DNA of 64,000 bases, taken from the NCBI GenBank assembly GCA_048013815.1, contig CM106586.1, positions 1,302,001 through 1,366,000 on the forward strand, given 5' to 3'. The number at the start of each line of letters is the position of its first letter. The stretch's first letter is position 1. The notes under the pieces are model-generated. The model was given only the letters and a program-made list of their open reading frames with translations. It was not told the origin of the DNA and did no database searches. Shown piece after piece: positions 1 through 9,500 of this stretch. This DNA is from Setoptus koraiensis (taxonomy: Eukaryota; Animalia; Arthropoda). Position numbers and translations under genes: made by a program.

Positions 1-105
1 GCCGCTACAGTGACTTGTGTGAGTCAGCTAAACACGACATTACACAACAACAACAATTCACACATTAATTGTTAATTGTTAACATTAAACAACAACCACA
101 ACAAC

Positions 106-1263
106 ATGAATAGAACACGTGTACTCAAGGAAGCCCAATTGAGGCGCCTCAAGGAGCACAAATACAGCTCCTCGGGCTCCACTATGCTGGACAAATATAT
201 GCAAATCTACTGGGAATGGGTTGTATCACATCTTCCTCTTTGGCTTGCCCCAAACACAATGACTTTATTAGGCTTAATTGTTGTTATCATAGCAACAACC
301 ATATTAATATATTATAGTCCCGATGCCAAGCAAGACATGCCACCATGGACAATGTTATTGAGTGCATTAAGTGTATTTATTTATCAAACCCTAGATGCTT
401 GCGACGGTAAACAAGCTAGAAGAACTCAATCCCAATCTCAGCTTGGTGAATTATTTGATCATGGATGCGATTCATTGTCCACTATATTTATTTCTATTAT
501 GGTAGCAATTACATGCCAACTTGGATCAAACCCTCCATTACTGTTTTTTCAATGCGCCTTTGCAATTTGTTTATTCTATTCAGCACACTGGCAAACTTAT
601 GTCTCTGGCACATTGAGATTCGGCAAGTTTGATGTCACAGAAATACAATGTAGCATAATGTCCATGCTTATATTAACAGCTGTATTTGGTAGTAAACTTT
701 GGTCGCTCTCAGTACCTGTAGTTAATATTTATATGAGTACGTTACCTGTTATTGGGGCAACAATTGGCGGGTCATTAGCGTTTTATGACTACTTTAGAAT
801 AATATTCACCGGAGGTGTTGGTAGAAATGGTTCATCAGTGGCAGGCACCAGTGTACTATCGCCATCAATACCATTAGCTTCGGTTATAGCGCCAGCTTTT
901 TTTATTTGGCAAAAATCACCATCTGGATTATATGAAAATAATATTTGCCTATATATTTTATGTATAGGATTTATAGCAACCAAGATTACAATGCGACTTA
1001 TTGTCTGTCATATGAGCAGAAGCGAAATGGATTACTTTGATTCTTCCATGATTGGACTGTTATGTTTATTCTTGAATCAATATTTTGATTGTATGTTAAA
1101 CGAAACGACAGTCCTATGGTTAGCCTTCCTATACTCAGTCTACGATCTCATTAGTTATTCTAGCTCACTATGTCAAGAAATATCAGAATATTTGAATATT
1201 TACACATTTACAATATCCAAAAGGGTACAAAAGGATAGGAGGACTTCTAGACGACAATACTAA
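106..1263 (+). CDS. CEPT1: Choline/ethanolamine phosphotransferase (CDP-alcohol phosphatidyltransferase), intronless, 385 aa
   Basis: CDP-alcohol phosphotransferase motif DACDGKQARRTQSQSQLGELFDHGCD (DGxxARx8Gx3Dx3D); HKYS...WLAPNTMTLLG N-terminus typical of CEPT1/CHPT1; multiple TM segments. First ATG is at 106; the ORF-track start at 76 is TTG. Confidence 0.95.
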   Translation: MNRTRVLKEAQLRRLKEHKYSSSGSTMLDKYMQIYWEWVVSHLPLWLAPNTMTLLGLIVVIIATTILIYYSPDAKQDMPPWTMLLSALSVFIYQTLDACDGKQARRTQSQSQLGELFDHGCDSLSTIFISIMVAITCQLGSNPPLLFFQCAFAICLFYSAHWQTYVSGTLRFGKFDVTEIQCSIMSMLILTAVFGSKLWSLSVPVVNIYMSTLPVIGATIGGSLAFYDYFRIIFTGGVGRNGSSVAGTSVLSPSIPLASVIAPAFFIWQKSPSGLYENNICLYILCIGFIATKITMRLIVCHMSRSEMDYFDSSMIGLLCLFLNQYFDCMLNETTVLWLAFLYSVYDLISYSSSLCQEISEYLNIYTFTISKRVQKDRRTSRRQY

Positions 1264-1310
1264 TAAACTGTTACAAAGATTATTAAATTAGATGAATTTC
1301 AAGTCTTTAT

Positions 1311-4238
1311 TTAAATATACATTATAAATGGTTGCATAGGGCAACATTCTTCCTGAATTTTGGCATCGGATGTATCGTCAACCTCTTTCAATTCTATATC
1401 TTGTATATCTAGAGTGTTTCGCAAGTAGGTTAGATTTTCTCCAAGTACTTTAATCTCGTTGAAAGGCGCCGTTTGATCAAATGCGCTTTCGCCTTGTTTA
1501 ACTATGAGTTGTTTCCTAACCTCAGCAAATGGCATAGCCTTTTTCATATACTTTTTCAATGACTCTATTTTGGATAGTTTAGAAGCTATTATCTTGTTTT
1601 CAGGCATTGAGCCGCAATGCTCAATATATAATTCATGCAGAGCTTCTGATATAGTAGCCTGCCAAGTTGGAAATATCCTAGCGACATAAATTGTTGCCTT
1701 AGACGCCTTTGGTGGGGCTTCCTGAGTTCCAGTAACTTTTGATTTCTTGTTCGACTTCAAACTTGCCAGTTGGAATGCTTTCAGACGTATTCTAAAATCA
1801 TGAGATACATCCATAAGGTATTCGTATGACTTGTGCAAGTCTTCATCAACAACCTCTGTAGTTGGGAACCTGACACAGGTGGTGAATAAAGTTAAATCCC
1901 TAGTTTGAGGCATCACTTCCTTCAATTTTTCTGCAATATGTGGGCAGATTGGACTCAGAAGGATTGTTTGGGTGTATATAAAACGCAAGGTGAGCTCTTT
2001 GTGCATACCTATCTCACCGCATAAATCACGGTATTTCAGTCTCAAGTCTTGGTATTCGAAGAAGCCATCCTTCAGAGCCTCTTTGAACATCATTTTTTCG
2101 TAATGATCACGAGTTGAGTTGATGTACCTATTCATCGCATTCTGAAAAGCTAGATCTGCAAAAGATTCAATCGGACCCGATCTTAATTGGTCTATGGAGC
2201 CGATGGTTTCTATGCACCATTTGTAATAATTGGATAATTTTAAAAGTCCAGTTTCTGCTTGCTTGGCGACGAAATTTGCGTCTTCGATGGCATCACCGGA
2301 GTCAGCCAGAGCGAATCGAACACCATCGGCACTGTAAATATTGATGGCGTCTTGAAGTGTAAGGAAATTACCAGTTGATTTCGACATCTTTTCACCGTTT
2401 AGTAATAGATGACCGTTGACACGGAAAGCTTTCGGCCACATATCTGGTTGATCTTGCCAGACGGCGCAATGATTATACAATGAGAAAGTTAAGTGATTTG
2501 CTATCAAATCTTTACCAGATGACCGCAAATCAACAGGATACCAATATTGAAACTGTCTACGCATCTCTTCTAGATGTTCTCTCGGGATTTGACTCTCATC
2601 TATGTCCTTGACATCACCAAAGAAAATGTAATTCCAAACCGATGGAGTCATGTGTGCTGGTGAGATCGTACCTAGTGAATTATCTGGTGATTCTATGAGA
2701 CTGTTATGCTGCAAATACTGTGATACAGTATAGTAGGCCATATAAATTGTTGAATCTGACAGTGATTCGACCAACCATTGCTCATCCCATGGAAGTTTTG
2801 TTCCTAGACCGTAGGTTCTTGAACAAGCATACTCATGCAGCCAGTCCACTGTTATTTCAAAATTCCGTTTTGTTTCCTCCGTGTAAGTTTCCAACTGATT
2901 TAGAGCTTTTCTGACATCCTGTTTCCAGGATTCGTCACCATAATCCAAATACCATTGGTCACATAAAGCTACGACACATTCTTCCCCAGAACGAGACATC
3001 ACTTGCTTCTCGGGTTCCATGTACTTGATTCGATTTGTTAGATCATCTTCTAGAGCGCATCGGACTAATTGTTGACCTTTGAACTCGCAAAGAGCATCAA
3101 CTTTACCATTGTTTGGGGTTAGATCTTGAAAAGACATGTTGAGTGCGATCCTCTCGTTACAGATGCCAATTTCATCATTCAGCAGTCTGAACGCAACATA
3201 TTTCATCTCCGGTTTGATCCAAGAATCAGATTGCTCACGAATGGAGTCGGGTTCCAGAGTAGGAAATAATAAGAATACCTTAGATTTGCTATTTGTATCT
3301 GTCACTAGTTCTAACGCTTCAGGTAACAAATTTTTCAATTTAATTTTGAAAAGAGTATATTCCAGTGGTGCAACACCTTCACCTGTAGCTCTATCGTGGT
3401 CCATGCATGGTTGCTGATCTCTGGGTGAATAAATGGTGTGTCTTTTGCCAAACTTAATTCTGTTGTTTTTCTTTAAATGCCAAAATTGCCACCTGACAAA
3501 ACTATCATAGTAAGGATTGTTTTCAGTGGTGATAAAAGTTCTTCTCCAATCGGCGCTTAAACCAAAAGCTTTCAAATCTCTTATGGCCTCACGCGGAAAG
3601 TATTCAAACCAATATTCCGGATTGGCAAATTTAGCAATTTCTAAATCTATCTTCTCTTGGCACTGTTCCTCTGTGAGATTGGCTGATTCCTCAGGACTCA
3701 GTTTGATATTCTCACGCATAATTTGCCACTGAAATTTTGCTGTGCCAGATTTGGCAGCCACTTTGGTCTTTTTTGCTTTGCCTTTATTCTGGACTTTGTT
3801 TTGACCCGCGGGACCGTCGGCATCCAACTTTGCACCATCACCTTGGCCTACCTCCATTTTATCTGCCTCTTCTTCTGTTGGAAACTTTGGCGGATTGCCA
3901 TAGGTGGCCATCTCACGTTTGAGTTTGTCAGCACAAGCCAATATTGGCATACCGGTACAATGAAAACCGAGAGGTAATAGACACTGATGGCCAGTTAAAC
4001 GTTTGTAACGGACATAGAATTCCACTTTAGACAGGGAAAACGAATGGCCCAAGTGTAGTTTTCCATTCATGTAAGGATAGGGGAAGGTGGCAAAGAATTT
4101 CCCGCTCTCAAACTTTTGTTGTTCAGCAGGACCAACTGGTTCGAAGGCTTTGTGACAAGACCACAATTTTTGTGCCGATGCCTCCATTTGCAGATATTCC
4201 GTCAGCTTTTCGCTGGACTTCCTCTGAGGTGCAGCCAT
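1311..4238 (-). CDS. LARS1: Cytosolic leucyl-tRNA synthetase, intronless, 975 aa, with internally deleted CP1 editing domain and no C-terminal UNE-L extension
   Basis: KFFATFPYPYMNGKLHLGH (HIGH-type motif), WLVESLSDSTIYMAYYT, DLRSSGKDLI, NGEKMSKSTGNF (KMSKS) and DAIEDANF, all typical of eukaryotic cytosolic LeuRS. Confidence 0.97.
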   Translation of the reverse strand: MAAPQRKSSEKLTEYLQMEASAQKLWSCHKAFEPVGPAEQQKFESGKFFATFPYPYMNGKLHLGHSFSLSKVEFYVRYKRLTGHQCLLPLGFHCTGMPILACADKLKREMATYGNPPKFPTEEEADKMEVGQGDGAKLDADGPAGQNKVQNKGKAKKTKVAAKSGTAKFQWQIMRENIKLSPEESANLTEEQCQEKIDLEIAKFANPEYWFEYFPREAIRDLKAFGLSADWRRTFITTENNPYYDSFVRWQFWHLKKNNRIKFGKRHTIYSPRDQQPCMDHDRATGEGVAPLEYTLFKIKLKNLLPEALELVTDTNSKSKVFLLFPTLEPDSIREQSDSWIKPEMKYVAFRLLNDEIGICNERIALNMSFQDLTPNNGKVDALCEFKGQQLVRCALEDDLTNRIKYMEPEKQVMSRSGEECVVALCDQWYLDYGDESWKQDVRKALNQLETYTEETKRNFEITVDWLHEYACSRTYGLGTKLPWDEQWLVESLSDSTIYMAYYTVSQYLQHNSLIESPDNSLGTISPAHMTPSVWNYIFFGDVKDIDESQIPREHLEEMRRQFQYWYPVDLRSSGKDLIANHLTFSLYNHCAVWQDQPDMWPKAFRVNGHLLLNGEKMSKSTGNFLTLQDAINIYSADGVRFALADSGDAIEDANFVAKQAETGLLKLSNYYKWCIETIGSIDQLRSGPIESFADLAFQNAMNRYINSTRDHYEKMMFKEALKDGFFEYQDLRLKYRDLCGEIGMHKELTLRFIYTQTILLSPICPHIAEKLKEVMPQTRDLTLFTTCVRFPTTEVVDEDLHKSYEYLMDVSHDFRIRLKAFQLASLKSNKKSKVTGTQEAPPKASKATIYVARIFPTWQATISEALHELYIEHCGSMPENKIIASKLSKIESLKKYMKKAMPFAEVRKQLIVKQGESAFDQTAPFNEIKVLGENLTYLRNTLDIQDIELKEVDDTSDAKIQEECCPMQPFIMYI

Positions 4239-5379
4239 TTCTGTCTAGATGCTGAGATTTAAATAGCTATGAGGTATCCTTTAAATAATAAATAATAATA
4301 AATAACAATAAATTTCAAGTGGAGGTAGTAATAATCCAGTTCAATCTAAAGTGTATTGTTATGTAAGAGAGGATATTAATGCCGATACTGCCGGCATCAT
4401 GTGAGTCATATGTCAGATTGGCTGCGAGAATCCATGCTTGTTCCTTTGACAATGAAAAAAGCGCACCGTGTATTTGCAAACACGCAGCAAGTAAAGCTGC
4501 CAAGTGAATAGCGCGCTGATCAATATTTTCATTGAGAGGAACTGGTCTGTCCCCAATCGAAATGCAAAAAAAAGTTGAGTTTGAAATTTTTGCCCGCTAT
4601 TTTCCCTTTCCGACTAGAACTTCCGCCAGATGGTCCTTTGAGCTTAAAATTTTATTTCATTTTCAACTAGATTATAGAAAAGAATTACATCTGCAATCAT
4701 TAGGTAATGGGACCATCTTGTAATGAATAATAAATAAAAGGTAGCCTGCTCAAACAAAGGGAAACAGAGATGATTCATTGATGCTAATGAGACAGCTCAT
4801 TATCAGCATATTGTTGTAATAATTGTTTATGATTATTACTATGGACAATGTTTAATTATATTTGTCCGTTGTGTTATTGGAAACGTGTAGATTTATTATG
4901 TTATGATGTGTTGTTGTTGTTATTATTATTATTAGCATTATTATCCATATCATTTATATTACACGAAGATACTTATTAATAGTTTGGAGAGACAACAATA
5001 CATTCCACTGATTCTATTCTTTTATACAATTTGTATGAGCTTTACAATTTATGAGCTTAGAGTTGTTTGTGTGTCTTATACTACCATAAAACTTGTGATG
5101 GTTCGTGTCTAATTGATGGCCCAATGTCTACTGATGGGCATACAATAACACAGAGAAAGAGAGGTCAGGTAATTGTGACAGGTCAATAATGGTCGAAATA
5201 CACTGCACTTGTGAGTTTACTGTTGCATTTGCTTATTAGCAGCTACCTGTAATGTTGTTGGCTGCCAGCCAGTTAGCCAATCAGCCAATCTTATGATTAG
5301 TTCACCGTTTGTTCCATTTGATACATCCGGTACATCGGTATGATTAACCTTTTTTTGTTTCATCTTATGGTTGGCTAAA

Positions 5380-6519
5380 TTATTGAGCTTTGAGTTTAGT
5401 TTGTTGATTGTTGCTTGATGATGATACACTGGCTTGTTTTTGTCCAACATTTGCATCTTTAGCCGCTGTCGTTGTGGTCTTATCCGCTGCTGGTGTTGCT
5501 GTATCTCTAATGTAGGCCTTGATGTAAAATGATACAAACAACCATAGGAATAATAATGCACCCAGTGTTTGTCCCAGCACAAATATAGCAGGATATGTAC
5601 AATTGTCGTAACCATATAAGAATAGTGGTTGTAATGAATGTACCACAGCAATTAAAAACTGTGCTATTTGTAAACGGGTCAAATAAACTTTCCACCAGAG
5701 ATACTTTTGTACTTTGGGTCCAAATGTTGATAAACCATAATAGCTATACATAATAACATGAACAACTAGATTTAGATAGGGTATGAAACAGCAGACTGGA
5801 TAAAAGGCAAATTTAACGCCTATCCAAAAGCCAACTGGCACAACAGTATGATGGAATACATGTAAGAATGATACGTGACTAAATTTTTTACGTAACACAA
5901 AGAATACTGTATCAAAGAAATCACAAAATCTTGATAGTAACACTAGCCAAACAATTGGTATTGCTTCGTCGACCATTGGCTGTAATGCCTTGCCACAACC
6001 CCAACACCATGAGCCATAATTGAGGAATGGTGAGGCGCCACAAAATAGATAGGCATTGAAGATAACCATGCCAAAGTTATAGAATCTGATTAATGGCTTC
6101 AAATCAAATGGTTCTCTATTTGACATTAATTGTGGTCCTAATTTCAATACAAAATATAAATATAATCCAACTATCGTTAATAATTGCCATGGTCCACCAT
6201 CGAATAGACTATATTTGTTTAATTCAGGATTGTGGTTCATCTCCCAAAAGTCATAATAGAGATATTGGGCCCATTCGCCGTAGGTGGACGACGAAGAAGT
6301 GGCATTAGTTAGCAAGGGGGTGATATCACTATTGATTGATGATTCAATTGTTGCTGCTGCTGCTGATTCTGACGCTTTTGATAGGATTGATGCTTCATGA
6401 TTATTGTTTATAGATGATAGTTGATCTGATATTAGTTGCTCTGTAGCATTATAAACAGTTTTAACGATTGTCTCGGTGGCTGTTGCGGCGACATTTAATT
6501 GGAGCGGAGATGACGCCAT
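5380..6519 (-). CDS. ELOVL: Very-long-chain fatty acid elongase (ELOVL1/7-like), intronless, with S/A/T-rich N-terminal extension
   Basis: DFFDTVFFVLRKK, HVFHH (HxxHH), LNLVVHVIMYSYYGL and KYLWWKVYLTRLQIAQF motifs. ATG at 6519; the ORF-track start at 6525 is TTG. Confidence 0.93.
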   Translation of the reverse strand: MASSPLQLNVAATATETIVKTVYNATEQLISDQLSSINNNHEASILSKASESAAAATIESSINSDITPLLTNATSSSSTYGEWAQYLYYDFWEMNHNPELNKYSLFDGGPWQLLTIVGLYLYFVLKLGPQLMSNREPFDLKPLIRFYNFGMVIFNAYLFCGASPFLNYGSWCWGCGKALQPMVDEAIPIVWLVLLSRFCDFFDTVFFVLRKKFSHVSFLHVFHHTVVPVGFWIGVKFAFYPVCCFIPYLNLVVHVIMYSYYGLSTFGPKVQKYLWWKVYLTRLQIAQFLIAVVHSLQPLFLYGYDNCTYPAIFVLGQTLGALLFLWLFVSFYIKAYIRDTATPAADKTTTTAAKDANVGQKQASVSSSSNNQQTKLKAQ

Positions 6520-9500
6520 GGTCAATGGCGCGCGCGTTGTTTTTTAGTGCGTGTATATATGTAAATCGTACAGGATTGAGATAAACAAACAAACAAGCGA
6601 CTTGCGACAGTTAATAACTGTTTTGATACACGCTAGAAAAAACTTATCAGGTTTGTCACTTTGGCTTGCGCTAATGATTAGGTCGATGATTCTTAATGTG
6701 TTGTTAACAAGAAGAGCGAAATGAATGAGTGAAGAAAAAAAAATGCGGCGTTAATTAACTATTTCCGCTTCTAGTTGTTGCAATGATGTGCTGCTGCTGC
6801 TTGATTACTGGCGCCGCAACACAGGTACTGATGAGTATTTCTGTAAAGTGTTGCTGCAGGTTGATTAGTGATTTAGCAGTAGTATTAGTAGGAGATTTAT
6901 CTAGTGCGTGTACACATGATGATGACTTAGTTTCACTTGACTTCTTAGGTGTGTGTGTGTGCTGGTCTTAGTCGTCGTCATTTGCAAGAAACATATCAAC
7001 AACATTAGCAACAACATTAACAACTTCAACAACAACAGCAACAACAACAACAACAGCAGCAGCACACAGTAGTATGGGCGACAACAACAACAGCAACAAC
7101 AATAACAAAAAGTCCAACAAATACAAATAACGCCGATAGCCAGCGAGTCAGCAAGCCAATGTTTGTATTTGTGAACTACTAATCATGATACTCACAATAG
7201 AATAGGAGGAGATATTGATGGTTGTTGTTAGGGGAAGCGGCGACAACAACAACAACCACGACAGACCATAATGAGACACCATCGAGAACATGCCGCCCGC
7301 CATGGGACAGCACGATGATAGAGTTAGAAGTCTCACAAGTCACCTGTGCTGACTTACAAGGTGAGAGAGGCTTACTGATGGTGACTTGCTCACTGCCGGC
7401 TGGCTCGCTCGCTGGCTGGCTGACTTAATGAAGCGTATCAGCAGCACCACCAGCAACTACCAACTGCCAACAACGACACACACTTTGCCAAGACCATGAG
7501 ACCGACTTGAGCGAGAGCAAACTCAAGCGAACGCATGGTAATGAGGGCGGCAATATGGTTGTTCTTTGCAGATTGTGTGTGTGTCGTTGCAATTGAAGTT
7601 GAAAGAGATGAATAGGTTAGATTAAGAGAAGGAGCGCTCAATTGTCGAGACACTTTCTCGGCTTCGAATCAAAACCAAGAAGAATCATCGAACCGGTTTT
7701 CACTCCCCGAAAGCGCGCTCATCAGATCAGTCTAGACGACGATGATCTAGCCAGTTAATGCTGGTTGATGATCGCTCTGGGCCCTTCTCTCTCGCTCACT
7801 CTCTCTGTTCTAACTAACAAATTCTGTTCTTGTATCTCTTTCTCTCTGTTCTTATTTTGTGCCGAGCTCTCTGCTCTCAACTTGTTCGCGCCGCTCGCTC
7901 GCTGCTCAACATTCCTCGCACTGGCTGTAGGAACAGTCAGCCAGACAAATATCCGAATATTCAAGCTGGCTCTTCTTTAGTTCAGTGGTCTGTTTGCTTG
8001 TTCTTGGTCAAACAACATAATTAATTCACGGCCACTATCAGCGAAACTAACTAACTAATAACAGGAAGTTGGCTTAAACAAGCGCAAACAACAGCAACAA
8101 CATGATATGGGCGAGATGCCAATCAGGCACAGTATTACGGTGTTACGATTTTATTGATATTTTGATTCAAAATCAAGTTTGCTCCTAACAAAACTTTCAG
8201 CCAGTTAGCCAGTTAGCCATTCAACCAGTTAGCCAATCAGCTAGCTGGCCAGACGACCGGTCAACGCCAACTAACCAAATAACTAATTGACTAATAAATG
8301 GCCAGATAACTGGCAACTTGACCATCACTTGGCGCGGTTGTTTGTGAAAACGAAAGTGAAACTAGAGAAATGAAACGAACAAGTGCACTTGCAGTCAGTA
8401 ACTTATGCCGATAATAATCATTACGATTATTATTACTATTATTATTATTATTATTACTTCTCCATTCTTCACTCTTCATTCCAATTTCAGTCCTAATACG
8501 AATGGGCATCTACTGCTGGTGTAATAATGCGTCTGCCGTTGTTTAACTAGATTTGTTTGTTGCACACATGACATGCCATGATCGAGTGGCCGAAGTTTAG
8601 CTTGGCCAGCAAAAACAGATAATTAACTGCTCACACAGCAGACAGACAAAATAACTTTCACTTGTTGTGTACAATTGACCATTCACCGTCAATACGAAAT
8701 CTCGGCCGTCGCTCGGTTCAAATTTGTATTCATCCATGAACTTGGGTGCGCTGAATCTGTTTATGGGCTATTCCAACTGCCAAGGTCGCTTTTGAAACAT
8801 TGACACTACTCGAGAATAGGAATATCTGAGCCATGCAAAGAGTTGAATAACCAAGAAAGTTAACAACCCACTAACAAGTAAGAGAAAGGAAAACAATTCA
8901 AACATGAGAATGAATGAAATCAATTGAGAACAGAAGCACGAGGCAAATATCTGATTTGGGTGTCGTGCAGGACCATTCGATCATCATTAGTGCGACAACG
9001 AATGATAAAAATTGCTGTTCCACAGCATTCAACATTGAAAAATCTTGTGAACGAATTGCAATATCAATTACATTGTAAGATCGACAAGTGTCGATAGAGA
9101 GGAAGAAACAGTTGTTCACCTCAGCCGTCGCTAAACTTCGTTGGGCATCAAGCTCGCTGTAAAATGACACACGTTTATTATGGATATACATCAAGATTCT
9201 AGCCGACCTCGTGTTCGAAGGACAAATAATATTCGAGACAGTCATACGTGAATATATCATGCGTAAATTGTTGTTTACAATTCACCGCATCTCTGGCAGG
9301 GATATTTACAGAGATATGCAATCAAAAACAGACAGTTCGTCTGGCTTAAGGTCGACTATTTAAAAAGCCCAAGAAAGTCTGGCTAGACCGAAATTCATCA
9401 AGTCGAAATTGGACGGTCGACTGATAAAGCTAAGTGGACGGTAAAAATGAAAAAAAAAGCGACTCGATTATCGCCATTTGTTGTCCGTGTTTCTTACGCA

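What the first reader, a model, noticed from the sequence alone, without database searches (positions are those of the whole stretch)
3021..3383. Animal cytosolic LeuRS that has lost the catalytic core of its CP1 proofreading domain
Seen in sequence: between GEGV and YMEPEKQVMSRSG there are only 121 aa in one uninterrupted ORF, with the junction ...LVRCALEDDLTNRIK|YMEPEK at about 3021-3060. The human LARS1 interval, as I recall it, is about 252 aa. Roughly 130 aa are therefore missing, including the whole GTGVVTSVPSDSPDD segment with the catalytic editing Asp (human D399, E. coli D345). The retained Thr-rich motif is also eroded: ATLRPETMFGQTNCW has become PTLEPDSIREQSDSW (3219-3263), while flanking synthetic-site motifs remain highly conserved. 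Local decay plus deletion argues for real relaxed selection rather than a mis-assembly. Established: CP1 hydrolyses mischarged Ile/Met/norvaline-tRNA(Leu); degenerate CP1 domains are known from Mycoplasma and microsporidia, where they cause statistical mistranslation; benzoxaboroles need this site. Inference: this animal may run editing-deficient Leu decoding (error-prone proteome, or a compensating stricter synthetic site or trans-editing) and may be benzoxaborole-insensitive. I know of no description of this in a metazoan cytosolic LeuRS.
Basis: partly seen in the sequence, partly recalled or inferred. Interest (0 to 1): 0.93.

Follow-up and report, generated by a model that had tools for sequence, protein, structure and literature searches.

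The report
Mite LeuRS missing its proofreading core
A tiny plant-feeding (eriophyoid) mite makes its cytosolic leucyl-tRNA synthetase without the catalytic half of the proofreading domain, and related mites lost the same piece at least three separate times, which appears to be the first such case in an animal.

Summary
Window 1311-4238 (minus strand) is one uninterrupted 975-aa cytosolic-type LeuRS. From GEGV to YMEPEK it has 121 residues against 252 in mammals. The missing 131 aa include the GTG loop and the editing Asp (human D399). The Thr-rich motif is decayed.

The junction is spanned, with no alternative joints, by assembled contigs of four public runs from four studies.

The gene is under strong purifying selection: dN/dS is 0.06 against a 91%-identical sister species. 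It keeps 166 of 172 animal-invariant residues outside CP1, but only 13 of 56 inside it.

Relatives place it among eriophyoid mites, between Fragariocoptes setiger (truncated) and Aceria tosichella (intact). Truncated forms are scattered among about 24 intact eriophyoid LeuRS. A single origin is rejected, so there were at least three and up to five independent losses. One truncated/intact sister pair shares its neighbouring gene, which indicates in-place loss in the orthologue.

The deletion edges match those of microsporidian LeuRS. All eriophyoid LeuRS also lack the C-terminal ULD_3 domain.

Three things are not shown: that no second LeuRS exists in this genome, that the gene is expressed, and that fidelity actually drops.

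This scan separately noted AlaRS and ThrRS genes lacking editing domains in this genome. I did not test those.

The parts
1311..4238 (-). Intronless ORF for a 975-aa cytosolic (archaeal/eukaryotic-type) leucyl-tRNA synthetase; the stop codon is at 1311-1313
   Evidence: Pfam tRNA-synt_1, Anticodon_1 and RBD_LARS1. Human LARS1 structures match at E = 0. The AF2 model matches 6LPF at TM 0.77. dN/dS is 0.062 against L001.
3021..3383 (-). GEGV-to-Y(MEPEK) interval: the CP1 remnant, 121 aa where mammals have 252
   Evidence: dN/dS 0.17. pLDDT is mostly 75-91 in the model.
3219..3263 (-). Decayed Thr-rich editing motif PTLEPDSIREQSDSW (the intact consensus is ATLRPETMYGQTNxW)
   Evidence: R295 is changed in 5 of 5 truncated lineages and N304 in 4 of 5. 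The motif is invariant in 30 intact rows.
3024..3047 (-). Deletion junction (aa 398-405, ...DDLTNRIK before YMEPEK). About human residues 366-504 are missing, including GTGVVTSVPSDSPDD and D399.
   Evidence: Spanned by contigs in four runs with no joints.
3381..3443 (-). CP1 hairpin fragment 1 (human 236-256), retained
   Evidence: R236, Y240, P242, P247, D250, H251, D252 and G256 are all kept. These residues are needed for activation and aminoacylation in human LeuRS (PMC4138327).
2940..3023 (-). CP1 hairpin fragment 2 (human 507-534), retained directly after the junction
   Evidence: S516, R517, D528, Q529, W530, Y531, L532 and Y534 are all kept (PMC4138327).
4044..4055 (-). HIGH signature (HLGH, aa 62-65)
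2376..2390 (-). KMSKS signature (aa 617-621)
1470..1685 (-). RagD-binding domain (PF24810, aa 852-923). The protein ends 52 aa later, with no ULD_3 (UNE-L) domain.
   Evidence: tblastn finds no ULD_3-like or CP1-core-like coding sequence anywhere in the 64 kb window.
76..1263 (+). Convergent neighbour, a 395-aa ORF. Its homologue lies in the same position in the sister species' contig L001. It ends 48 nt from the LeuRS stop, so there is no room for a further LeuRS exon.

Best explanation
This is the orthologous, and probably the only, cytosolic LeuRS of an eriophyoid mite. It still activates leucine and charges tRNA-Leu. An in-frame deletion of about 131 aa removed the half of the CP1 domain that forms the hydrolytic editing pocket (the GTG loop and the Asp that anchors the amino group, human D399). 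The Thr-rich wall of that pocket has since decayed. The enzyme therefore cannot carry out CP1-dependent post-transfer editing of Nva-, Ile- or Met-tRNA-Leu. The retained N-terminal half of CP1 and both CP1-hairpin strands are kept for structural reasons. The deletion edges sit just where aminoacylation-critical elements begin, and the same module was excised independently in other eriophyoid lineages and in microsporidia. Shown here: the architecture, the reality of the junction, selective constraint, recurrence, and positional orthology in one sister pair. Inferred: loss of deacylase activity; that fidelity now depends on the synthetic site and any CP1-independent pre-transfer editing; that Leu-codon mistranslation is raised, as in microsporidia and Mycoplasma (my estimate about 55%); and that benzoxaboroles, which trap tRNA-Leu in the editing pocket, have no target.
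For: Architecture. Junction real: contigs of four runs from four studies, no joints.

Functional gene: dN/dS is 0.062 overall and 0.02-0.04 in the catalytic parts, at dS 0.75, against the sister species. It keeps 166 of 172 residues invariant in 47 intact animal LeuRS outside CP1, against 13 of 56 inside CP1. HIGH, KMSKS and all tested CP1-hairpin residues are kept. The AF2 model has pLDDT 81 and matches human LRS 6LPF at TM 0.77.

Clade: the protein is bracketed by Fragariocoptes setiger KAG9508813.1 (truncated) and Aceria tosichella A0A6G1SPP9 (intact).

Recurrence: truncated forms are scattered in the tree, and one clade for all six is rejected with the CP1 columns removed (dlnL 299, p-AU 4e-45). 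The deletion edges differ between lineages, and P0022 keeps a KGTG relic.

In-place loss: truncated P0028 and intact P0025 come from different samples and share the convergent PfkB neighbour.

One LeuRS lineage only: the 30 eriophyoid sequences form a single clade, and no second mite-like clade occurs among the 120 best hits.

D399A in human LeuRS permits Nva/ABA mischarging (PMC3017609). Precedents with measured mistranslation: PMC7373986 and PMC7017984.
Against: I could not search the rest of this genome, so a second LeuRS with an intact CP1 is not excluded. Expression is not shown, because the library kind of the runs is not on record. No enzymology or proteomics exists. Human LeuRS also has CP1-independent pre-transfer editing (PMC3017609), and human mitochondrial LeuRS is described as coping with a degenerate CP1 (my recollection, not checked here), so fidelity may be preserved. 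The remnant is still under constraint (dN/dS 0.17) and could retain some unknown role. I found no convergent compensating changes in the synthetic site, which neither supports nor excludes compensation.
Confidence: 0.75

Rival explanations
1. It is a specialised paralogue. A second, full-length LeuRS elsewhere in the genome does the bulk charging with proofreading, and this copy has another role, or a condition-specific low-fidelity role.
For: The genome outside the window could not be searched. The three long-branch truncated lineages (window+P0001, P0026, P0033) can be held as one clade without loss of likelihood (p-AU 0.555), and that clade could in principle be an old paralogue clade.
Against: Only one eriophyoid LeuRS clade exists among the 120 best database hits. 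The annotated F. setiger proteome contributes only the truncated protein, whereas canonical LARS1 as distant as vertebrates all score high enough to be listed. None of the samples looked up yields both forms. P0028 and P0025 are syntenic orthologues. A redundant, editing-defective copy would not be expected to keep 96% of invariant catalytic residues and dN/dS of 0.02-0.04.
Confidence: 0.12
2. CP1 editing is lost, but fidelity is maintained by a stricter synthetic site, CP1-independent pre-transfer editing, or low exposure to norvaline and other near-cognates. There is then no statistical proteome.
For: Human cytosolic LeuRS clears alpha-aminobutyrate mainly by pre-transfer editing (PMC3017609). 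The catalytic core is very strongly constrained.
Against: In the two documented natural precedents, mistranslation was measured. There are no recurrent substitutions in the synthetic core across the independent losses; only human D138 and D209 recur outside CP1.
Confidence: 0.35
3. It is a catalytically inactive LeuRS-derived signalling protein (a leucine sensor for TORC1), analogous to the human splice variant LSV3.
For: The RagD-binding domain is retained. Human LSV3 shows that LARS can lose charging and keep signalling (PMC8941210).
Against: LSV3 deletes 71 aa of the Rossmann-fold catalytic domain, not CP1. Here HIGH, KMSKS, the CP1 hairpins and 166 of 172 invariant residues are intact, and the Rossmann halves are the most constrained parts.
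Confidence: 0.04
4. It is an assembly or annotation artefact, or a decaying pseudogene.
For: None found.
Against: Identical contigs occur in four runs from four studies with no joints. The same architecture occurs in a sister species at 91% identity and dS 0.75. The reading frame is open and dN/dS is 0.06.
Confidence: 0.01

Closest known systems
Microsporidian cytosolic LeuRS (for example Vavraia culicis; here Astathelohania contejeani KAF7684363.1, P0354)
   Same: It is the same eukaryotic-type enzyme with the same excision. The N-terminal part of CP1 is kept but degenerate, the GTG-to-D399 core is gone, and the chain rejoins just before Y(M/Y)EPE. Appended C-terminal domains are also lost. 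The organism has a reduced genome and depends on a host. Mistranslation at Leu codons has been measured there (PMC7373986, PMC7017984).
   Different: Those are fungi-related intracellular parasites and the loss is ancestral to the group. Here the organism is an animal that lives on plant surfaces and in galls. Close relatives still have a perfectly conserved CP1, and the loss recurred at least three times. The window protein is an animal LARS1 by phylogeny.
Mycoplasma LeuRS with absent or degenerate CP1 (M. mobile, PDB 3ZIU; Li et al. 2011 as cited in PMC7373986)
   Same: A natural loss of LeuRS editing in a genome-reduced, host-associated organism, with charging retained.
   Different: It is a bacterial-type LeuRS in which the whole CP1 is missing. 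It gives only a weak structural match to this model (TMq 0.39).
Canonical animal LARS1 (human 6LPF/6KID; 1176 aa)
   Same: 52% identity. Same fold (TM 0.77), HIGH/KMSKS, CP1 hairpins, anticodon-binding domain and RagD-binding domain.
   Different: The window protein lacks about human residues 366-504 (the editing pocket) and the C-terminal ULD_3/UNE-L domain, which ties LARS to the multisynthetase complex (PMC8941210). It carries an insertion of about 20 aa before the CP core that is shared by most eriophyoid LeuRS.
Intact-CP1 eriophyoid LeuRS (Aceria tosichella A0A6G1SPP9 and about 23 unnamed assemblies, 1069-1121 aa)
   Same: Same clade, same insertion, same lack of ULD_3, intronless compact loci, 58-62% identity.
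   Different: They keep ATLRPETMYGQTN and GTGVVTSVPSDSPDD unchanged.
Human LARS splice variant LSV3
   Same: A naturally occurring internal in-frame deletion in LARS.
   Different: LSV3 removes part of the catalytic Rossmann fold and abolishes charging (PMC8941210). Here the catalytic fold is untouched and the editing pocket is removed.

Membership tests
Archaeal/eukaryotic-type cytosolic LeuRS (LARS1) | Class Ia Rossmann core with HIGH and KMSKS | tested here: met
   HLGH at aa 62 and KMSKS at aa 617. PF00133 at E 1e-23.
Archaeal/eukaryotic-type cytosolic LeuRS (LARS1) | Overall sequence and fold match to solved LARS1 | tested here: met
   6lpf, 6kid and 9w01 at E = 0 and 1014 bits. Foldseek TM 0.77-0.78.
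Archaeal/eukaryotic-type cytosolic LeuRS (LARS1) | Split CP1 hairpin (CH1/CH2) flanking the CP1 insertion | tested here: met
   16 of the 17 residues mutated in PMC4138327 are conserved. G245 is Q here, as in Dermatophagoides.
Archaeal/eukaryotic-type cytosolic LeuRS (LARS1) | CP1 editing pocket: Thr-rich motif, GTG loop, catalytic/anchoring Asp (human D399) | tested here: not met
   The GTG-to-D399 stretch is absent and the Thr-rich motif is decayed. Only 13 of 56 invariant CP1 positions are kept.
Archaeal/eukaryotic-type cytosolic LeuRS (LARS1) | Anticodon-binding and RagD-binding C-terminal domains | tested here: met
   PF08264 and PF24810.
Archaeal/eukaryotic-type cytosolic LeuRS (LARS1) | Metazoan C-terminal ULD_3/UNE-L domain | tested here: not met
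   No PF22947. The ORF stops 48 nt from the convergent neighbour. None is found in the window.
Naturally editing-deficient LeuRS (Mycoplasma / microsporidia kind) | Editing-site residues deleted or degenerate while synthetic motifs are conserved | tested here: met
   The deletion edges are the same as in microsporidian P0354.
Naturally editing-deficient LeuRS (Mycoplasma / microsporidia kind) | It is the organism's working LeuRS (no intact second copy) | tested here: inconclusive
   Single eriophyoid clade, synteny of P0025/P0028, strong constraint. The full genome was not searchable.
Naturally editing-deficient LeuRS (Mycoplasma / microsporidia kind) | Loss of deacylation, mischarging, and mistranslation at Leu codons | not testable with these tools
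   Needs enzymology and proteomics.
Catalytic-null LARS variants (LSV3-like) | Deletion within the Rossmann catalytic domain; no charging | tested here: not met
   The catalytic parts are intact and the most constrained. LSV3 is defined in PMC8941210.

The most novel reading that the evidence does not exclude
Eriophyoid mites, the animals with the most streamlined arthropod genomes, are dismantling aminoacyl-tRNA proofreading as a lineage trait. LeuRS editing was lost repeatedly, and AlaRS and ThrRS may also lack editing domains (scan notes on this genome, untested). These animals would then live with a measurably error-prone, 'statistical' proteome, something so far documented only in Mycoplasma and microsporidia.
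Probability: 0.3. Interest if true: 0.9.

Novelty: new member of a known kind. Interest (0 to 1): 0.76.

Why it matters
Natural loss of LeuRS proofreading has been documented only in Mycoplasma and microsporidia, and it is taken as a hallmark of extreme host restriction. In animals, editing defects of synthetases are known mainly as causes of disease.

Here an animal lineage carries a strongly conserved LeuRS without the editing pocket. Close relatives with an intact pocket sit next to it in the tree, including a syntenic intact/truncated sister pair. That is a ready-made natural experiment with at least three replicates. It allows direct tests of how much proofreading an animal proteome needs, what compensates for its loss, and whether loss follows genome streamlining.

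It also shows that the C-terminal half of eukaryotic CP1 is an excisable module with fixed edges, because mites, microsporidia and giant-virus-like contigs all remove the same piece. Finally, it predicts that benzoxaborole LeuRS inhibitors would not act on these crop-pest mites through the usual editing-site mechanism.

Tried and rejected
1. Free-standing CP1 core or ULD_3 domain in the window: tblastn with seven CP1 cores and three C-terminal domains gave only chance hits, apart from the 13-residue overlap with the LeuRS C-terminus itself.

2. Stand-alone CP1 proteins in the 5.8-billion-protein collection, searched with a profile of five eriophyoid CP1 cores restricted to 82-262 aa: only exon or contig fragments of LeuRS from beetles, nematodes, plants and others, at 47-74% identity. 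None was eriophyoid-like.

3. A single origin of all truncated forms was rejected. The three long-branch lineages as one clade could not be rejected, so I claim at least three losses, not five. A further test (window+P0001+P0033) did not finish in time.

4. Synteny between the window locus and intact relatives: no shared neighbours except with the truncated sister species L001. For P0022/P0024 there is only a weak, inverted neighbour homology (E 1e-5) and no match to P0027's neighbour.

5. Convergent compensating substitutions in the synthetic site: none. Recurrent changes lie in CP1, except at human D138 and D209.

6. Other animals with the same loss: among 150 representatives at 50% identity, all other short-CP1 LeuRS fall outside the animal clade. 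Clustering at 50% can hide cases.

7. Literature: no paper on eriophyoid synthetase editing was found. PMC6298100 (Melnikov et al. 2018b) is not held.

8. Whether X2, X5 and X7 are RNA runs could not be determined.
Full report
**What is there.** Window 1311-4238 on the minus strand is one uninterrupted ORF of 975 codons.
- Pfam finds the class I synthetase core, the anticodon-binding domain and the LARS1 RagD-binding domain.
- The best solved relatives are human cytoplasmic LeuRS structures at E = 0. The match is split in two: query 5-418 on chain residues 25-407, and query 399-972 on 522-1081 of 6lpf_A.
- GEGV starts at residue 286 (3383-3372) and the Y of YMEPEK is residue 406 (3023-3021), so the interval is 121 residues. 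In a 1176-aa mammalian LARS1 the same interval is G256-Y507, 252 residues.
- The missing roughly 131 residues include the GTG loop and SDSPDD with D399.
- The Thr-rich motif at 3263-3219 reads PTLEPDSIREQSDSW.
- The protein also stops about 115 residues before mammalian LARS1 and lacks the ULD_3 (UNE-L) domain. A convergent gene ends 48 nt beyond the stop. Neither a CP1 core nor a ULD_3 domain is encoded elsewhere in the 64 kb.

**Is it real?** Contigs of four public runs from four studies were laid on 1250-4300.
- Two runs cover all 3051 nt without a difference. One has a 1622-nt contig over 2327-3948. One has a contig over 2806-3170. No joints or indels occur at the junction.
- One run (X1) may be the assembly's own source.
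- All four are assembled contigs rather than raw reads, and their library kind is not on record. This shows the DNA is real. It does not show expression.

**Is it a working gene?** A 977-aa protein of the same architecture, 91% identical, is encoded on a contig from another sample with the same convergent neighbour.
- Nei-Gojobori estimates between the two genes give dS 0.75 and dN/dS 0.062 overall.
- By region, dN/dS is 0.04 and 0.02 in the two catalytic parts, 0.11 in the C-terminal part, and 0.17 in the CP1 remnant.
- Of 228 alignment columns invariant in 47 intact LeuRS from mites to vertebrates, the window protein keeps 166 of 172 outside CP1. All six changes are conservative. Inside CP1 it keeps 13 of 56.
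- HIGH, KMSKS and 16 of the 17 CP1-hairpin residues whose mutation impairs activation and charging in human LeuRS (seven abolish it) are present (PMC4138327).
- An AlphaFold2 model (pLDDT 81, pTM 0.81) matches human LRS 6LPF at TM 0.77. It predicts the remnant (residues 291-405) as an ordered subdomain. The alignment that fed the model contains intact homologues, so this part of the prediction is weak evidence.

**Whose gene is it?** The nearest proteins are mite LeuRS.
- Thirty sequences form one well-supported clade, sister to other acariform mites.
- Named members of that clade are Fragariocoptes setiger KAG9508813.1 (937 aa, truncated) and Aceria tosichella A0A6G1SPP9 (1093 aa, intact). 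Both are eriophyoid mites.
- The loci are intronless and tightly packed.
- The window organism is therefore an eriophyoid mite, in agreement with earlier notes of this scan.

**The loss is recurrent.** Six of the thirty sequences are truncated: the window protein, P0001, P0022, P0026, P0028 and P0033. They represent five lineages.
- Every deletion starts near human residue 360-372 and ends at 500-506, but the edges differ. P0022 still carries the relic IKDDKGTG.
- All thirty intact sequences in that alignment (24 eriophyoid, six other animals) have ATLRPETMYGQTN and GTGVVTSVPSDSPDD unchanged. All five truncated lineages have a decayed Thr-rich motif, with R295 changed in 5 of 5.
- At positions at least 80% conserved among intact eriophyoid LeuRS, the remnant differs at 26-59% in truncated sequences and at 0-10% in intact ones.
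- In the tree, P0028 is sister to intact P0025 (support 100). P0022 lies inside a clade of intact P0021, P0024 and P0027 (support 100).
- With the CP1 columns removed, a single clade of all truncated forms is rejected (dlnL 299, p-AU 4e-45).
- The three long-branch lineages (window+P0001, P0026, P0033) can be joined at no cost in likelihood (p-AU 0.555). The supported count is therefore at least three losses and at most five.

**Orthologue or extra copy?** I could not search the rest of the genome, so the case is indirect.
- (a) Truncated P0028 and intact P0025 come from different samples, and both have a convergent PfkB gene directly downstream. The PfkB proteins are 61% identical, and the LeuRS are 82% identical in the C-terminal part. 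This is in-place loss in the orthologue. Intact P0003, P0025 and P0027 share further neighbours, TMEM179 upstream and KxDL downstream.
- (b) Among the 120 best hits there is a single eriophyoid clade and no second mite-like clade. The annotated F. setiger proteome contributes only the truncated protein, although vertebrate LARS1 still score high enough to be listed.
- (c) No sample that I looked up yields both forms.
- (d) The strength of constraint on the catalytic core is what one expects of the enzyme that charges tRNA-Leu.
- I put the sole-copy reading at about 0.8 and a specialised paralogue at about 0.12.

**Mechanism.**
- Established: post-transfer editing by LeuRS takes place in the CP1 pocket. 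Some pre-transfer editing is independent of it (PMC3017609).
- Shown here: the pocket is physically absent, while the two hairpin strands that human LeuRS needs for activation and charging flank the deletion untouched.
- Inferred: the enzyme charges tRNA-Leu but cannot deacylate mischarged tRNA-Leu. Benzoxaboroles that trap tRNA-Leu in that pocket would have no site. Leu codons are probably decoded with more errors, as measured in microsporidia (up to 5.9% at Leu codons) and Mycoplasma (PMC7373986, PMC7017984).
- I found no recurrent substitutions in the synthetic core that would suggest compensation. Only human D138 and D209 recur outside CP1.

**Comparison with what is known.**
- A scan of 1.84 billion representatives found about 25 further short-CP1 LeuRS among the best 150. 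All lie outside the animal clade.
- One is the microsporidian Astathelohania contejeani. Its deletion edges coincide with those in the mites.
- Two others lie on ankyrin-rich, gene-dense contigs that look like giant viruses.
- So this is a new, animal member of a known kind. Its novelty is that intact and truncated forms coexist among close relatives and that the loss recurs.
- I found no description of it in the searchable literature.

**Earlier notes of this scan.** They report, on other DNA of this genome, AlaRS genes without editing and C-Ala domains and a ThrRS without an editing domain. I did not test these. If they hold, they would make the loss of proofreading a lineage-wide theme.

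Noticed in passing
window 1311-1470 (-); alignments A1/A2: All 30 eriophyoid LeuRS, intact or truncated, end right after the RagD-binding domain and lack the C-terminal ULD_3/UNE-L domain (PF22947). In human LARS that domain tethers the enzyme to the multisynthetase complex (PMC8941210). Some other acariform sequences (P0032, P0036, P0042, and the 'partial' P0029 and P0030) also lack it.
   Followed up: partly
L012:3489-6071, L013, L014:6001-8607, L015: Two LeuRS with truncated CP1 (P0254, 860 aa; P0259, 868 aa) sit on gene-dense, intronless contigs rich in ankyrin and F-box proteins. One contig also carries another class II synthetase, and one is 127 kb long. The context looks like a giant virus, which would mean viral LeuRS without an editing core.
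   Followed up: partly
P0354 and about 20 unnamed representatives: Microsporidian-type LeuRS are cut at the same two edges as the mite enzymes: after the first half of CP1, and just before Y(M/Y)EPE. The C-terminal half of eukaryotic CP1 therefore behaves as an excisable module.
   Followed up: partly
L009 (P0025): The intact sister of truncated P0028 has the most diverged CP1 core of all intact eriophyoid LeuRS: 20% of conserved positions changed against 0-13% in the others. Its GTG-to-D399 motif is still present. Relaxation may precede physical deletion.
   Followed up: partly
window 3910-3965, run X2 record 3: A 217-nt contig at depth 4, against 117 for the main contig, matches this conserved stretch with 5 differences. 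Its flank reads like another eriophyoid-type LeuRS (…ELFGNPPSF…). The 30-fold lower depth points to a second mite species in the sample, not a paralogue.
   Followed up: no
window 3627-3722 (-), about aa 173-204: An insertion of about 20 residues (…ENIKLSPEESANLTEEQCQEKIDLE…) before the CP core is shared by most eriophyoid LeuRS and absent from other animals. P0025 and P0028 lack it.
   Followed up: no
same genome, outside the window (scan notes s1-321316, s1-330318, s1-314362): Earlier first-stage notes report AlaRS genes that stop before the editing and C-Ala domains, and a mitochondrial-type ThrRS without TGS and editing domains. I did not test these. They are relevant as possible parallel loss of proofreading.
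   Followed up: no
window 76-1263 (+) and 5380-6525 (-): The flanking genes are intronless ORFs of 395 aa (a multi-pass membrane protein, convergent, 48 nt from the LeuRS stop) and 381 aa (with a 'HVFHH' motif, ELO-like by my reading). The layout is typical of the very compact genome.
   Followed up: no
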